From the IMG/VR virus record IMGVR_UViG_3300050120_000230, positions 186,001 through 250,000 of that record: 64,000 bases of DNA; one strand, written 5' to 3'. Each line of letters starts with the position of its first letter. The first letter of the stretch is position 1. The notes beneath the pieces were generated by a model. It did not search any database. It was given only the letters and a program-made list of their open reading frames with translations, and was not told the origin of the DNA. Below are positions 18,191 through 52,742 of this stretch, in pieces. The position numbers and the translations under genes are program-made.

Positions 18191-18238
18191 GCGAAGAAAA
18201 ATATTGCAGCCCAATCTCGTATACCATATATTCAAATC

Positions 18239-18502
18239 TCGGGTCGGCCAAACGTGCACGTTCGGCTTTTCCGAGTTACGCCCGTCCAAGCGACCGCATG
18301 AGGACGTTAAACTAAAGGGTGGTGGCTTTTAGCCCGGTTGGGTCGAAACCGGCTCTTGTTTAGGGGACCAAGTTCAACATCCTCTGCGCTCGCTTGTGGC
18401 GCGATGGCGCTAGTCATCATTACAGGTCGGCCCCGCTCTGGGCCGCATTATGGGGTAAGCTACCCCTTGAAAGGCCCCGGCGTATGGCATCGCCGGGGCT
18501 TT
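18239..18502 (+). ncRNA. candidate structured non-coding RNA (~260 nt)
   Basis: TTGCAG-N17-TATATT promoter (18204-32), several hairpins, terminator 18474-18502, no credible ORF. Confidence 0.5.
18474..18502. terminator. probable bidirectional terminator
   Basis: AAAG-GCCCCGGCG-N8-CGCCGGGGC-TTT between convergent units. Confidence 0.7.
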
Positions 18503-18508
18503 GGCATG

Positions 18509-48286: not shown

Positions 48287-48736
48287 ATGAACCCGTTCTT
48301 GATGTCGCCCCGACAATTGTTGGCCGACTGGAAGACTTTCCGAACCTCTTTGTCGGCGCTCCCCGAGGCCGAGCAACTTGATTCGGTTGCAGAATACTGG
48401 GCCAAGGCGCCGGTGAAGACGATGGCCTATGATCCCGAGGCGTTGGATACCTACCCCACGCCTTGGGAAATGATGGACGAGAACGACTGGTGCCGGAACT
48501 CCGTGGCCGTGGGCATGGATTTCACCCTGCGTTTGGCTGGCTGGTCCCCGGATCGCCTTCGCATCAAAATGATGCGTGACTACGACATTTCAGACCAAAA
48601 ACTCGTCGTCGAAATTGACGGCAACACCCTTCTTAACTACGATTATGGAATTGCAGTGGGTGTCCCGCAAACACGATTTGATATTCTTCAGACGTGGCGT
48701 TTTACGGGCAAGCATTACGAGAAAGTGGGCGGCTAA
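48287..48736 (+). CDS. conserved-looking phage protein
   Basis: 149 aa; YPTPWEM...WCRNS. Confidence 0.65.
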   Translation: MNPFLMSPRQLLADWKTFRTSLSALPEAEQLDSVAEYWAKAPVKTMAYDPEALDTYPTPWEMMDENDWCRNSVAVGMDFTLRLAGWSPDRLRIKMMRDYDISDQKLVVEIDGNTLLNYDYGIAVGVPQTRFDILQTWRFTGKHYEKVGG

Positions 48737-48771
48737 ATACCTCCCCAAAATCATTTCAGGACGTAAAAAAC

Positions 48772-51246
48772 ATGCAAGTTCGTAAGAGGAACGGCAGCTA
48801 TGAGGCTGTTGACCTAAACAAAATCGTCGGCTCTATTTCTCGTGTTTGTGCCGATCTCGGCGATCTCGACATTTTCAAGGTAGCTACCAAAACGGTTGGT
48901 GGTCTGGTGGACGGAGTTTCCACCCGAGAGCTTGATTTGCTCTCCATCCGTAACGCAGTCGGCCTCATCATCGAAGACCCGGTCTATTCCAAGGTCGCCG
49001 CCCGTCTTCTCTCGAACTTCATCATCAAGGAAATCGACGGACAAGATATCCAGTCGTTCTCTCAATCCATTCAAATTGGATACGAGCAGGGCCTCATCAA
49101 TCAACAGACCTACGATTTGGTCACCGCGAACAAGCGCAAGCTGAATGCCGCCATCCGCAACGAGCGTGATTGGCTGTTCGAGTTCCACGGTATCCAGACG
49201 GTCTACGACCGCTATCTCCTGAAGCACCCCACGCTCGTGCTGCTTGGTGACGATGGTAAGAAGTCCCGTGCGGTCATCGAGACCCCGCAATACTTCCTGA
49301 TGCGCGTGGCTTGCGGTCTGTGCAACGACGCGGCCGAAGCCGTCGAACTCTACAATCTGCTGTCCAGCCTCGAATATATGGCTTCGACGCCGACCCTGTT
49401 CAATTCGGGCACGGTCCACAGCCAAATGTCGTCCTGCTATCTGCTCGATAGCCCGCTCGACAGCCTCGAAGACATCTACAAGCGTTACAGCGACATTGCG
49501 GCGCTCTCGAAGTTCGCCGGTGGTATTGGCGTTGCCGCCAGCCGCATTCGGTCGAAGGGCCGCCACATCAAAGGGACCAACGGCAAGTCCAATGGTCTCG
49601 TGCCGTGGCTGCATACCCTCTCCGGTTCAGTCGCCGCCGTCAATCAAGGTGGCAAGCGCAAGGGCGCGGCCTGCGTCTATCTTGAGACCCATCACCCGGA
49701 CATCATGCAGTTCCTCGAACTGCGAGACAACACCGGTGAGAAGGAGCAGCGCGCCTACAACCTGAACCTCGCGAACTGGGTGCCCGACCTGTTCATGAAG
49801 CGCGTTCAGGAAGATGGCCTGTGGTCTTTGATCGACCCGTCCGTGGCGCCGGAACTCACCGATCTCTACGGCGACGAATATGAAGCCCGAGTGCTTGAGA
49901 TCGAACGTGACGGGTTGTTCGTCGAACAAATCCCCGCCCGGAAACTCTACGGTCGCATGATGCGGACGTTGGCGGAAACCGGCAACGGCTGGATGTGCTT
50001 CAAGGACACGTCCAATCGTCGGGGTAATCAGGTCGGCGAAGGTGGCATGATCCACCTGTCGAACCTCTGCACCGAAATCCTCGAAATTACGTCCTCCGGC
50101 AAGCGCACCAATTTGTCGCGCACGGAAATGCTGGGAACTTCTGCCTCCGATCTGATCGAGAAAAACGTTCGCGTCACCGGGTTCGATCCGAAGTCCGACA
50201 CCTTCGAAGCCATTCAAGGCATGGAGACAGCGGTCTGCAATCTCGGTTCGATCAACGCCGGGCGTGGATACGTGAAGAACGGCAAGCTGAACGTCGAGAA
50301 GCTGCACAAGAACGTCGCCACCGCGATCAAATATCTGGACCGCGTCATCGACCGCAATTTCTACCCGATCCAAGAAGCCGAATCGTCCAACATGCGTTGG
50401 CGGCCGGTGGGTCTGGGCCTGATGGGTCTGGCTGATCTCTTCTTCCAACTGCGTCTGCCGTTCGAGAGCGACGAAGCTATCGAACTGTCGGCCACGATTC
50501 AGGAAGAAATCTACTACCAAGCTCTGAAGACTTCCAACGAACTGGCGAAAGCCTATGGCGCTCACCGTGATTTCAACCTCACGCGCGCCGCCAAGGGCGA
50601 TCTGCAATTTGATCTGGCAGGTGTCAAACCGAAAGACATGACTCGCTGGGACGCTTTGAAGGCGGACATCAAGGAGCACGGTCTTCGAAACTCGCTGGTG
50701 ATCGCCATCGCGCCCACCGCGACTATCGCGCACATCACCGGTGTCGAAGAATGCATTGAGCCGATCAAGTCGAACCTGCTCAAGCGCGAAACCCTCTCGG
50801 GAGAGTTCATCGCGATCAACCGCTATCTGGTTGACGATCTGAAGAAACTCGGCCGATGGGACGCAGAAGCGATCAACCTGCTGAAGCGCGACGAAGGGTC
50901 CATGCAGAAAATTCCGGGCCTGCCGGAAGAATTGTATGCACTCTACAAGACGGTTTGGGAGATCAGTCAAAAGAAGGTGATCGAACACGGCGCCGCCCGT
51001 GGCGCCTTCATCGATCAATCCCAATCGTTGAACACTTTCATCGACTTGAACAAATACCCCGAAGACAAGCGTATCGGAGTCCTTTCCTCTCTCTATATGT
51101 ATGCATGGGAAAAGGGTCTGAAGACCACATACTACTTCCGCAGTCGCTCGGGTTCTCGCATTGAGAAAGTCACCGTCTCTGGCACGACTTCCGTGGTGCC
51201 TGCCATGGCGGCCGAAGAACCGGAAATCTGCGAAAGCTGCACTTAA
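48772..51246 (+). CDS. nrdA: class Ia ribonucleotide reductase alpha subunit with ATP cone
   Basis: VRKRNGS ATP cone, TPTLFN, SSCYL, SNLCTEI, AVCNLGS, APTA, KTTYY and C-terminal CESC. Confidence 0.97.
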   Translation: MQVRKRNGSYEAVDLNKIVGSISRVCADLGDLDIFKVATKTVGGLVDGVSTRELDLLSIRNAVGLIIEDPVYSKVAARLLSNFIIKEIDGQDIQSFSQSIQIGYEQGLINQQTYDLVTANKRKLNAAIRNERDWLFEFHGIQTVYDRYLLKHPTLVLLGDDGKKSRAVIETPQYFLMRVACGLCNDAAEAVELYNLLSSLEYMASTPTLFNSGTVHSQMSSCYLLDSPLDSLEDIYKRYSDIAALSKFAGGIGVAASRIRSKGRHIKGTNGKSNGLVPWLHTLSGSVAAVNQGGKRKGAACVYLETHHPDIMQFLELRDNTGEKEQRAYNLNLANWVPDLFMKRVQEDGLWSLIDPSVAPELTDLYGDEYEARVLEIERDGLFVEQIPARKLYGRMMRTLAETGNGWMCFKDTSNRRGNQVGEGGMIHLSNLCTEILEITSSGKRTNLSRTEMLGTSASDLIEKNVRVTGFDPKSDTFEAIQGMETAVCNLGSINAGRGYVKNGKLNVEKLHKNVATAIKYLDRVIDRNFYPIQEAESSNMRWRPVGLGLMGLADLFFQLRLPFESDEAIELSATIQEEIYYQALKTSNELAKAYGAHRDFNLTRAAKGDLQFDLAGVKPKDMTRWDALKADIKEHGLRNSLVIAIAPTATIAHITGVEECIEPIKSNLLKRETLSGEFIAINRYLVDDLKKLGRWDAEAINLLKRDEGSMQKIPGLPEELYALYKTVWEISQKKVIEHGAARGAFIDQSQSLNTFIDLNKYPEDKRIGVLSSLYMYAWEKGLKTTYYFRSRSGSRIEKVTVSGTTSVVPAMAAEEPEICESCT

Positions 51247-51289
51247 AGGCTCGCTTGACCACCGTGACCCTTGCTCGCATAGTGTGAGG

Positions 51290-51567
51290 GTCACGGCGAC
51301 GTTGACGGTCGGTATTAAGGTTCAGCAGTTCGGGCAGCCCGCCCCCGCTTGAAGCCCAGAAAGCTGAGCACCAAAACTTACCCGAGTCGGGTGGTAGTGT
51401 CTTCTTTAGGCATCGGAAACGGTGTCACCGTAATCGCGAGTCGGCAGGCTGTGGATAATGCTTCCACGGATAAGGGTGAAGGTGCTGTAGGGACCGGGAG
51501 CTAAACCGGGCCGTGATTCGATGGTAGGATCGAAATGGGAAGGGCCGTCCGAAAGGGCGGCCCTTTT
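51290..51567 (+). ncRNA. candidate structured non-coding RNA (~275 nt) between nrdA and nrdB
   Basis: TTGACC-N17-CATAGT promoter (51255-83); multiple stems; GAAA-capped terminator 51540-67. Confidence 0.5.
51540..51567 (+). terminator. intrinsic terminator
   Basis: AAGGGCCGTCC-GAAA-GGGCGGCCCTT followed by TT. Confidence 0.85.
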
Positions 51568-51722
51568 CGTCACAAACATATTGAGATTCATCCGAGGGAT
51601 TCCGTAGGATGCATCATGGTAAACGATAATATCTCGTCCTCCTAAAGCCACTCAACCTGAGCCGTATTACCGGTTCTGGGGCACCTAAATACTCGCTCAT
51701 AATACTGCATTAGGAGAATATT

Positions 51723-52742
51723 TTGTCCGATTCTCAACACAACCTGCTGACGCCGGGTTTCGATCTCACGCTGCGTCCGATGAAATACCCCCAATTTTAC
51801 GATGCCTTCGTCAAGGCCCAAGACAACAACTGGACGGTTCAGGAAATCTCGTTCGGAACCGACATCGCCGATCTTCGTGAAAAGCTTACGCCCGGCGAAC
51901 GACACATCGTGTCCCGCCTCGTGGCATTCTTCGCTACCGGAGACTCCATCGTCGGCAACAATGCCGCGCTCACGCTCTACAAGCATGTGAACAGCCCGGA
52001 AGCCCGCCTCTATTACAGCCGCCAGATTTACGAAGAGGCGCTGCACGTCCAATTTTATCTGACGCTTCTCGACAACTACGTCACCGACCACGCCGAGCGT
52101 GCGGAAATGTTCGACGCCATCAACAACATCCCGAGCGTCAAGGCCAAGGCCGAGTGGACGTTCAAGTGGATGGATCAAATGAACGCCATCGACATCATCG
52201 AGACGGACGAACAGCGCAAGACATTCCTTATGAACCTGTTGGCGTTCACGATGGGCGTCGAGGGTCTCTTCTTCTACGCAGCGTTCGCATACGTCTACTA
52301 CCTGCGCGACCGTGGCCTCCTGCATGGACTGGCATCCGGTACGAACTGGGTGTTCCGCGACGAGTCGTGGCACATGCGATTCGGTTTCATGATCGTGGAT
52401 ACGATCCGCAAAGAGATGCCCCACCTGTGGGACGCGGATATGGAAGCCCGCGTCTACGCGATGGTTGAGGAAGCAATTCGCTGCGAGATGATGTTCGCGG
52501 AAGACGTGCTGTCGGTCGGCGCCATGGGCCTCAGCCTGAAGGACATGGAGGAATATCTTCGTTTCGTGGCCGATGGCCATCTGCGTCGTCTGGGCATGGC
52601 TCCTGCCTACAATGCGACATGCCCCTTCGACTTCATGCTGAAACAGGATGTGCAGGCGCTCACAAGTTTCTTCGAACGCACGGTGGCGGAATACACCGTG
52701 GGGATCGGCGGCGAAGTCGATCTGAAAGTCGAGGATTGGTGA
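51723..52742 (+). CDS. nrdB: class Ia ribonucleotide reductase beta subunit
   Basis: TGD, EALHVQFY (radical Tyr), VEGLFF and DESWH; TTG start with GGAG; TAAATA at 51686. Confidence 0.96.
   Translation: MSDSQHNLLTPGFDLTLRPMKYPQFYDAFVKAQDNNWTVQEISFGTDIADLREKLTPGERHIVSRLVAFFATGDSIVGNNAALTLYKHVNSPEARLYYSRQIYEEALHVQFYLTLLDNYVTDHAERAEMFDAINNIPSVKAKAEWTFKWMDQMNAIDIIETDEQRKTFLMNLLAFTMGVEGLFFYAAFAYVYYLRDRGLLHGLASGTNWVFRDESWHMRFGFMIVDTIRKEMPHLWDADMEARVYAMVEEAIRCEMMFAEDVLSVGAMGLSLKDMEEYLRFVADGHLRRLGMAPAYNATCPFDFMLKQDVQALTSFFERTVAEYTVGIGGEVDLKVEDW

What the first reader, a model, noticed from the sequence alone, without database searches (positions are those of the whole stretch)
51255..51567. Candidate ~275-nt ncRNA inserted between nrdA and nrdB
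Seen: a 10-bp stem CCGTGACCCT/AGGGTCACGG after nrdA overlaps a TTGACC-N17-CATAGT promoter. The following ~275 nt carry stems such as CCAG-AAAG-CTG, CATCG-GAAA-CGGTG, GTGGA/TCCAC, CCGG/CCGG and TTCGAT/ATCGAA, then a GAAA terminator. nrdB has a separate TAAATA. Inference: an independent RNA gene similar in size to the 18.2-kb unit, possibly a decoy for defence proteins or a regulatory RNA.
Basis: partly seen in the sequence, partly recalled or inferred. Interest (0 to 1): 0.62.

Follow-up and report, generated by a model that had tools for sequence, protein, structure and literature searches.

The report
Orphan structured RNA after phage nrdA
Between the two ribonucleotide-reductase genes of a huge peat phage lies a real, selectively conserved, non-coding RNA element of about 230-280 bases that matches no known RNA family; it has been found in only one other phage, and its function is unknown.

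Summary
Window 51255-51570 carries a sigma-70-like promoter match, a multi-helix region and a strong terminator hairpin, between nrdA (48772-51246) and nrdB (51723-52742). The window lies in a 415-kb virus record from peat.

The element is real. One other phage contig (L003) has it at 85% identity, while third codon positions of the flanking genes differ by 37-47%. It does not encode protein: it has five indels, none a multiple of three, and substitutions fall 9/13/11 by codon position. Two helices keep pairing through compensatory changes, four of them double. Structure is supported on the + strand only.

It matches no Rfam family, tRNA or tmRNA, and it is unrelated to the 18.2-kb unit.

About 25 related phages (NrdA or NrdB 60-91% identical) lack it. 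They carry a bare terminator, a short element with a C-rich loop, or small ORF cassettes at this junction.

nrdB has its own conserved promoter motifs downstream of the terminator. In L003 a 750-nt gene cassette separates the RNA from nrdB, so the element is not an nrdB leader.

Best reading: a lineage-specific ncRNA cassette, transcribed from its own promoter (start near 51290) and as the tail of nrdA mRNA, probably acting in trans. Expression and function are untested: no RNA runs exist, and there are only two sequences.

The parts
48772..51246 (+). nrdA (class I RNR large subunit, 824 aa). A CTAAATA motif lies at 48733-48739, 39 nt before the ATG.
   Evidence: Pfam ATP-cone, Ribonuc_red_lgN and Ribonuc_red_lgC. 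The start is set by the 824-aa database entry P0001 and its homologs. Motif.
51255..51283 (+). Sigma-70-like promoter match: TTGACC, 17 nt, CATAGT. The expected start is near 51290.
   Evidence: 9/12 match. Kept in L003 as TTGACC-N17-CATACT. The class TTGAC[CG]-N17-nAnnnT occurs 52 times in the genome against 19.7 in shuffles. Function is not shown.
51262..51296 (+). 13-bp RNA hairpin after the nrdA stop codon. Its loop contains the -10 hexamer. Its 3' arm overlaps the 5' strand of the closing helix, so the two cannot form together.
   Evidence: -25.4 kcal/mol in the window and -26.3 in L003. 5 of 13 pairs differ between the two phages and all stay paired: 2 double changes and 3 single. G-U pairs are valid only on the + strand.
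51290..51517 (+). Structured core closed by helix 51290-51297 with 51510-51517. It contains H2 (51298-300/51308-310), H3 (51311-13/51370-72), H4 (51320-35/51354-69), H5 (51376-95), H6 (51396-404/51478-86), H7 (51409-26, GAAA loop), H8 (51449-69, loop UAAUGCU) and H9 (51494-97/51506-09).
   Evidence: Model on alignment A9: 62 pairs, 99.2% of cells paired against 33-45% when partners are slid, and 4 pairs changed on both sides. In H6, 7 of 9 pairs changed and all are kept. Column-shuffle z is -2.4 on the + strand and -0.35 on the - strand.
51336..51353 (+). 18-nt C-rich apical loop of H4, with an 11-nt block (CGCCCCCGCTT) invariant in both phages.
   Evidence: Similar C5-C7 apical loops occur in the shorter elements at the same place in L122 and L123, and a C-run in L117.
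51517..51534 (+). Small hairpin TTCGAT / ATCGAA. L003 has a different small hairpin, GATCG / CGATC, at the same place.
51535..51570 (+). Intrinsic-terminator-like hairpin (16 bp, GAAA loop) running into TTTT.
   Evidence: -29 kcal/mol, z -7.3. L003 has a different stem sequence with the same design and five T.
51581..51610 (+). nrdB's own sigma-70-like promoter match (TTGAGA, 18 nt, TAGGAT), preceded by ATA.
   Evidence: Conserved in L003 and in relatives as ATATTG...TAnnAT. The class is enriched, 15 against 3.8.
51685..51691 (+). CTAAATA motif 38 nt before the nrdB start codon.
   Evidence: Conserved upstream of nrdB in L003, L117, L118, L121, L124 and L125. 67 copies in the genome against 28 expected.
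51723..52742 (+). nrdB (RNR small subunit, 339 aa, TTG start after AGGAG).
   Evidence: Pfam Ribonuc_red_sm, E 1e-78.

Best explanation
A lineage-specific gene cassette for a structured non-coding RNA, placed in the hypervariable nrdA-nrdB junction of a huge phage.

Shown:
- The DNA from about 51253 to 51570 is under purifying selection.
- It is not protein-coding.
- It keeps a multi-helix fold on the + strand through compensatory changes.
- It ends in a strong terminator hairpin.
- nrdB has its own promoter motifs beyond that terminator.

Inferred:
- Host RNA polymerase starts at the TTGACC-N17-CATAGT promoter near G51290.
- The first 8 bases of that transcript pair with 51510-51517 and close a roughly 228-nt domain. 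The RNA ends at about 51570, giving about 280 nt.
- Transcripts that read through from nrdA instead form the 13-bp hairpin 51262-51296. That hairpin uses the same bases, so these transcripts cannot close the domain. Only the promoter-derived RNA would be in the closed form.
- The RNA then acts in trans. The two candidate modes are binding through the invariant C-rich apical loop (51336-51353), or binding a protein as a compact folded scaffold built on a GAAA tetraloop and multi-way junctions.

Which target it has is unknown.
For: Conservation:
- L003 is 85% identical over the core (33 substitutions in 215 aligned columns).
- Third codon positions differ by 37% in nrdA, 47% in its last 85 codons and 46% in nrdB.

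Not coding:
- Five indels, none a multiple of three. Substitutions by codon position are 9/13/11, and no frame is open and shared.

Structure:
- H6 has 7 of 9 pairs changed and all kept. The closing helix has 2 double compensations.
- 99.2% of cells pair, against 33-45% with slid partners.
- The alignment shuffle gives z -2.4 on the + strand (8 of 300 shuffles as good) and -0.35 on the - strand.

Boundaries:
- The promoter hexamers are conserved and the promoter class is enriched in the genome.
- The expected start coincides with the first base of the closing helix.
- The terminator is kept in design but not in sequence.

Modularity:
- In L003 a 750-nt cassette with its own TTGACG promoter and three small ORFs sits between the terminator and the conserved nrdB promoter region.
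- Relatives have other contents at this junction.
Against: - There are only two sequences. Covariation statistics are therefore weak: 23 of 500 shuffles reach the observed score.
- There is no expression evidence. Only two DNA runs from peat hold the stretch.
- The promoter is only a consensus match. Its conservation is not clearly above the 85% background of the element.
- The compensated upstream hairpin shows that some RNA enters from nrdA, so the element could be purely a 3' UTR.
- A second fold appears in both single-sequence minimum-energy structures: 51380-51405 pairs with 51453-51477 in place of H5 and H8. It cannot be excluded.
- The C-rich loop shows no excess complementarity to the phage's own translation start regions.
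- The single-sequence folding z-score is within this genome's background.
Confidence: 0.5

Rival explanations
1. A purely cis-acting 3' UTR of nrdA mRNA. The hairpin, the folded domain and the terminator together stabilise or tune the nrdA transcript. No separate RNA is made, and the promoter match is a coincidence.
For: - nrdA has its own CTAAATA motif upstream, and nothing terminates transcription before 51535.
- The 13-bp hairpin right after the stop codon is kept by compensatory changes and is valid only as + strand RNA.
- Relatives L117, L122 and L123 also carry about 100 nt of structured sequence between the nrdA stop and the terminator.
Against: - Many relatives manage with a bare terminator directly after nrdA. 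A constrained 230-nt multi-junction domain is therefore more than mRNA protection needs.
- The closing helix begins exactly at the expected start site, and it is incompatible with the read-through hairpin.
- The promoter hexamers are kept in both phages.
Confidence: 0.22
2. A cis-regulatory leader for the genes downstream. It would work either as a riboswitch or attenuator, or as a put-like processive antitermination RNA that decides whether polymerase passes the terminator at 51535-51570 into nrdB.
For: - The order promoter, folded domain, strong terminator, gene is the classic anatomy of such leaders.
- There are two mutually exclusive pairings at the 5' end and an alternative central fold.
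- RNR genes are known riboswitch targets. This last point rests on my own knowledge: cobalamin and 2'-dG riboswitches.
Against: - nrdB has two conserved promoter motifs of its own downstream of the terminator.
- In L003 the element is separated from nrdB by a 750-nt cassette with its own promoter.
- I found no antiterminator pairing that competes with the terminator stem.
- The terminator is very stable (-29 kcal/mol).
- No Rfam riboswitch matches, even at E up to 10.
Confidence: 0.1
3. A non-functional remnant, for example a decayed gene or the scar of a mobile element, or simply a chance fold. Its similarity to L003 would reflect recent exchange rather than selection.
For: - Distribution is very narrow, 2 of about 35 related loci.
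- The junction is a hotspot for insertions.
- The folding z-score is within the genome background.
Against: - The adjacent last 85 codons of nrdA differ at 47% of third positions, against 15% in the element. A recent transfer would have to cover only the element.
- Substitutions concentrate in helices and are compensated.
- Promoter and terminator are both retained.
Confidence: 0.1
4. A small protein gene, for example the 51-codon frame 51349-51504 or the 69-codon frame in L003.
For: An open frame covers the region in L003, and part of it is open in the window.
Against: - The window frame is broken relative to L003 by 1-nt and 2-nt indels.
- There is no excess of third-position changes (9/13/11).
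- There is no Shine-Dalgarno sequence before the TTG at 51349.
- No Pfam family matches.
Confidence: 0.03

Closest known systems
3'-UTR-embedded bacterial sRNAs with their own promoter that share the mRNA's terminator (DapZ and MicL type; from my own knowledge)
   Same: It lies directly after a stop codon. It ends at the terminator that also ends the upstream mRNA. A promoter-like site sits at the end of the upstream gene. The RNA can therefore exist both as an mRNA tail and as a separate transcript.
   Different: Those sRNAs are about 80-150 nt, depend on Hfq and carry a short linear seed. This one is about 280 nt with a closed multi-junction fold. No target or chaperone is known, and expression is unproven.
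sRNAs that use C-rich apical loops to pair with G-rich ribosome-binding sites (RsaE/RoxS, RNAIII and RepG type; from my own knowledge)
   Same: It has an invariant C-rich apical loop on a long hairpin. C-rich loops recur in the shorter elements at the same position in related phages.
   Different: No target was found, and there is no excess complementarity to the phage's own start regions. The loop could equally form an internal pseudoknot with the conserved G-rich segments (GGGTGG, AAGGGTG).
Insertions at the nrdA-nrdB junction and in nrd genes of T4-like phages (mobE, group I introns, inteins; from my own knowledge)
   Same: The same junction is a hotspot for variable cassettes in this clade: small ORFs, a methyltransferase-like ORF, and inteins in NrdA.
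   Different: There is no endonuclease gene. There is no group I or group II intron signal in Rfam. The element does not interrupt a coding sequence.
Large orphan structured RNAs of phages and prophages (GOLLD, ROOL) and HK022 put RNA (from my own knowledge; those that Rfam holds were among the families searched)
   Same: It is a phage-borne RNA of complex fold and unknown or unusual function. As with put, the order is promoter, folded RNA, terminator.
   Different: No Rfam model matches. The size is different: 600-800 nt for GOLLD and ROOL, about 70 nt for put. It is not next to tRNA arrays.

Membership tests
Any Rfam 15 family (riboswitches including cobalamin, T-box, RNase P, 6S, SRP, tmRNA, group I/II introns, GOLLD/ROOL, known sRNAs) | A match to the family covariance model at or near its gathering score | tested here: not met
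   There were no hits at gathering score in the whole window. At E up to 10 in 51100-51800, and E up to 1 in L003, L117, L122 and L123, only terminator-hairpin matches far below threshold appeared: CC2171 at 15 bits against 75, BjrC68 at 22 against 39.
tRNA / tmRNA | A cloverleaf or tRNA-like domain with a tag reading frame | tested here: not met
   ARAGORN found none in the window. It found 52 tRNAs and no tmRNA elsewhere in the genome.
Transcription-attenuating riboswitch or leader of nrdB | It lies in the 5' UTR of the regulated gene, between that gene's promoter and its start codon | tested here: not met
   The conserved nrdB promoter motifs (51581-51610 and 51685-51691) lie downstream of the terminator. 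L003 has a 750-nt cassette in between.
Transcription-attenuating riboswitch or leader of nrdB | A terminator that competes with an alternative antiterminator pairing | tested here: inconclusive
   Inspection and the minimum-energy folds show no antiterminator. Alternative folds do exist elsewhere in the RNA.
3'-UTR-embedded sRNA with its own promoter | It lies after the stop codon and shares the upstream mRNA's intrinsic terminator | tested here: met
   The nrdA stop is at 51244-51246. The only terminator-like hairpin before nrdB is 51535-51570.
3'-UTR-embedded sRNA with its own promoter | An internal promoter gives a primary transcript | tested here: inconclusive
   There is a 9/12 consensus match, kept in L003, and the class is enriched in the genome. 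No RNA data exist.
3'-UTR-embedded sRNA with its own promoter | It regulates targets in trans by base pairing | not testable with these tools
   The host is unknown. The C-rich loop shows no excess complementarity to the phage's own start regions.
Group I intron (common in phage nrd genes) | It interrupts a coding sequence and has the P3-P9 core | tested here: not met
   nrdA and nrdB are intact on either side. There is no Intron_gpI match at E up to 10.
Small protein gene | A conserved open frame with a codon-position substitution bias | tested here: not met
   Indels shift the frame, substitutions are 9/13/11 by codon position, and there is no Pfam match.
Same family as the 18.2-kb unit (18239-18502) | Shared sequence and structure | tested here: not met
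   Covariance model R1 finds only 51286-51512 in the window at E up to 10. The MAFFT alignment shows no shared blocks.

The most novel reading that the evidence does not exclude
The element founds a new class of phage-encoded structured RNA with a tertiary fold: a closed multi-junction domain, a GAAA tetraloop and a bistable core. It would be made only from its own promoter, because read-through transcripts are locked out by the upstream hairpin. It would act during infection as a protein-binding RNA or ribozyme-like RNA, for instance as a sponge or decoy for a host factor or defence protein.
Probability: 0.15. Interest if true: 0.7.

Novelty: new member of a known kind. Interest (0 to 1): 0.42.

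Why it matters
Huge phages are known for tRNAs and translation genes, but their non-tRNA RNA genes are almost unexplored. This is a concrete, bounded candidate of 228-280 nt with a testable fold, a predicted start and a predicted end. It has a built-in contrast: the promoter-derived form should fold closed, and the read-through form should not.

If it is expressed, it would be a new RNA family. It would also be a handle on how such phages add regulatory cassettes at the RNR junction.

Its value is limited for now. There are only two copies, both from uncultured phages, with no host and no expression data.

Tried and rejected
Searches for a known family or more copies:
- Rfam at gathering score and at relaxed thresholds found no family.
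- ARAGORN found no tRNA or tmRNA here.
- BLAST against 50,697 phage records found no match.
- Three gapped DNA patterns scanned over IMG/VR found only the L003 contig.
- One pattern over 185,579 prokaryote genomes gave 20 hits. That is about the number I would expect by chance, the hits come from unrelated taxa, and none matches the covariance model.
- Covariance model R1 found nothing in the rest of the own genome, in four related virus records (two of them complete), or in about 50 loci scanned around NrdA or NrdB relatives from metagenomes, ENA and Logan. A sequence profile (nhmmer) and BLAST over all loci held at that point also found nothing.
The last one, with L014's NrdA, found nothing.
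- A search with the small CxxC ORF family found no new RNA-bearing contig.

Expression:
- Only two DNA runs from peat hold the stretch, one of which is probably the source. There are no RNA runs. Laying contigs gave no variant in the element.

Target search:
- The C-rich loop was tested against 562 ORF starts and showed no enrichment over random sites.

Ideas dropped on inspection:
- T-box (GGGTGGTA resembles the T-box core): the order of motifs is wrong and there is no Rfam match.
- RNase P (AAGGGTGAAGGTGC resembles CR-II): there is no P4 pairing and no Rfam match.

Methods that failed:
- The ORF-gap scan for other ncRNA cassettes failed because spurious ORFs cover this GC-rich DNA.
It was redone from files.

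Full report
**Context.** The window is bases 186001-250000 of a 415-kb IMG/VR virus record, estimated 72% complete and 55% G+C. The record carries 52 tRNA genes. The only sequencing runs that hold the stretch are two peat metagenomes, and one is probably the source. nrdA and nrdB are confirmed by Pfam. Homologs put the nrdA start at 48772, giving 824 aa. The spacer between the two genes is 51247-51722.

**Observation.**
- The promoter-like site is TTGACC, 17 nt, CATAGT at 51255-51283.
- The stem after nrdA extends to 13 bp (51262-51296, -25.4 kcal/mol), and the -10 hexamer sits in its loop.
- The terminator hairpin 51535-51570 has 16 bp, a GAAA loop and -29 kcal/mol, and runs into TTTT.
- Folding of 51247-51575 gives z -4.4 on the + strand and -2.8 on the - strand.
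- As a control I folded 40 random 329-nt segments of the same genome. The mean z was -1.3 with sd 1.8, and 4 of 40 were at or below -4.4. Folding energy alone therefore proves nothing here.

**Comparative evidence.**
- Searching with NrdB and NrdA found about 90 related loci in IMG/VR and JGI metagenomes. Eleven more loci came from ENA, Logan and JGI through the 83-91% identical NrdA proteins.
- Only one other phage has the element: contig IMGVR_UViG_3300009177_000057, held as L003, L014 and L015, with NrdA 90-91% identical. It lies at the same place and aligns from the -35 hexamer to the terminator.
- Over the core there are 33 substitutions in 215 aligned columns (15%), plus five indels of 1 or 2 nt.
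- Third codon positions differ by 37% in nrdA, by 47% in its last 85 codons next to the element, and by 46% in nrdB. The element is therefore under purifying selection. It is not a recently exchanged patch.
- It is not coding. The indels shift every frame, substitutions fall 9/13/11 on the three codon positions of the longest L003 frame, and no frame is open and shared.

**Structure.** RNAalifold and my hand-refined model give a closed multi-junction fold.
- The closing helix pairs 51290-51297 with 51510-51517.
- Inside it lie these helices:
  - a long hairpin H4, with an 18-nt C-rich loop whose central 11 nt are invariant;
  - hairpin H5;
  - helix H6 (51396-51404 with 51478-51486), which closes a three-way junction;
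  - H7, with a GAAA tetraloop;
  - H8, with the loop UAAUGCU.
- H9, a small hairpin and the terminator follow.
- In H6, 7 of 9 pairs differ between the two phages and all remain paired, two by double changes.
- The closing helix has two further double changes and one broken pair.
- Overall, 99.2% of cells pair, against 33-45% when partners are slid by 1-3 columns.
- Column shuffling of the alignment gives z -2.4 on the + strand (8 of 300 shuffles as good) and -0.35 on the - strand.
- With two sequences this is suggestive, not conclusive: 23 of 500 partner shuffles reach the observed score.
- Both single-sequence minimum-energy folds also contain an alternative pairing, 51380-51405 with 51453-51477, in place of H5 and H8. 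All those bases are invariant, so covariation cannot choose between the two.

**Boundaries and biogenesis.**
- The expected start of the promoter, 7 nt after the -10 hexamer, is G51290. That is the first base of the closing helix.
- The same bases form the 3' arm of the upstream 13-bp hairpin. That hairpin is itself kept by two double and three single changes. It contains G-U pairs that work only in + strand RNA.
- So RNA does enter from nrdA. In that RNA the hairpin, which is made first and is more stable, should prevent closure of the domain. A transcript that starts at 51290 can close it.
- The hexamers are kept in L003 as TTGACC and CATACT. The class TTGAC[CG]-N17-nAnnnT occurs 52 times in the genome, against 19.7 in shuffles.
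- The terminators of the two phages differ in stem sequence but not in design.

**Not an nrdB leader.**
- Downstream of the terminator, nrdB has a conserved sigma-70-like site (51581-51610, in the context ATATTG...TAGGAT) and a CTAAATA motif (51685-51691). Both recur upstream of nrdB in relatives that lack the element.
- In L003, a 750-nt cassette with its own TTGACG-N17 promoter and three small ORFs lies between the RNA's terminator and that nrdB upstream region.
- The element therefore behaves as a separate module.

**The junction is hypervariable.**
- Relatives carry one of the following at this junction:
  - only a terminator after nrdA (L118, L121, L125, L126, L127);
  - a small ORF (L007-L010, L016 and L124, L018, L019, L022);
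  - a methyltransferase-like ORF (L020, L021);
  - about 100 nt of hairpins plus a terminator, followed by a 62-65-aa CxxC ORF (L117, L122, L123).
- In L122 and L123 a hairpin presents a C5-C7 apical loop, and L117 has a C6 run. This resembles the window's H4 loop.
- This hints that a C-rich loop after nrdA is older than the large domain. MAFFT could not establish homology, and R1 gave only a 5.7-bit match in L123.

**Identity.** The element matches no Rfam family, tRNA or tmRNA. It has no match among deposited phage genomes or elsewhere in its own genome. It is unrelated to the 18.2-kb unit.

**Mechanism.**
- I commit, at about 50%, to an independently transcribed, trans-acting structured RNA of about 280 nt. 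It is also present, in a different fold, as the tail of nrdA mRNA.
- The C-rich loop and the compact GNRA-containing domain are the likely functional surfaces.
- The C-rich loop shows no excess complementarity to the phage's own translation start regions. Any base-pairing target would therefore more likely be in the host.
- A purely cis 3'-UTR role (about 22%), a leader or antitermination role (about 10%) and a non-functional remnant (about 10%) remain open.

**Limits.** There are two sequences, no RNA data and no known host. No alternative genetic code was used.

Noticed in passing
window 48733-48739 and 51685-51691; genome-wide in G000: CTAAATA occurs 67 times against 28 expected. In most copies ATG follows 3-7 nt later (for example CTAAATA-nnGG-ATGCGTG). 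That looks like a phage-specific promoter giving leaderless mRNAs. Many of these genes begin MR(D/E)(F/L)I, which suggests a paralogous family. nrdA and nrdB each have the motif 38-39 nt before their start codons.
   Followed up: partly
window 18204-18505: The '18.2-kb unit' consists of TTGCAG-N17-TATATT (18204-18232, in an AATATTG context like the nrdB promoter), about 260 nt with folding z -4.6, and a terminator hairpin near 18474-18505, lying between two ORFs. It has no Rfam hit. It has no match in five related virus records. It is unrelated to the nrdA-nrdB element.
   Followed up: partly
L117 4982-5108, L122 2534-2660, L123 4970-5078: Phages with NrdA 86-91% identical carry a shorter structured element (z -2.9 to -6.7) between the nrdA stop and the terminator. 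In L122 and L123 it has hairpins that present C5-C7 apical loops. This may be an older, simpler relative of the window's H4 hairpin.
   Followed up: partly
L003 2130-2321, L117 5143-5340, L122 2694-2882, L123 5087-5272: A conserved 62-65-aa protein with invariant Cys and His residues (C7, C10, C22, H24, C47), 43-49% identical. It sits in its own promoter cassette right after the nrdA terminator in several relatives and is absent from the window. Function unknown.
   Followed up: partly
L005, L006; proteins P0007, P0010, P0028-P0047: Many related NrdA proteins are 950-1340 aa with Hint/intein and LAGLIDADG domains, and nrdA is in pieces in L005 and L006. L020 and L021 carry an extra ORF with a DPPW motif (methyltransferase-like, judged by eye, no family search) in the nrdA-nrdB spacer. 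The RNR locus is a hotspot for selfish insertions in this clade.
   Followed up: no
G000:C1 373385-373472, 297550-297621, 379988-380070: Among the 52 tRNA genes, ARAGORN calls one with anticodon CUA (labelled Pyl; an amber-suppressor type) and two with odd anticodon loops. No alternative code was assumed or needed in the window.
   Followed up: no
G000 genome-wide, including window 51578 and 18201: Sigma-70-like promoters with an ATATTG -35 context followed by TAnnnT occur 15 times, against 3.8 in shuffles. TTGAC[CG]-N17-nAnnnT occurs 52 times, against 19.7. The phage appears to use host-type promoters alongside the CTAAATA class.
   Followed up: partly
window 51380-51405 with 51453-51477: The segments ACCC, GTGG, CCAC and GGGT each occur so that two mutually exclusive folds are possible: hairpins H5 and H8, or one long-range helix. 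Both single-sequence minimum-energy folds, of the window and of L003, choose the long-range version. The RNA could be bistable.
   Followed up: partly
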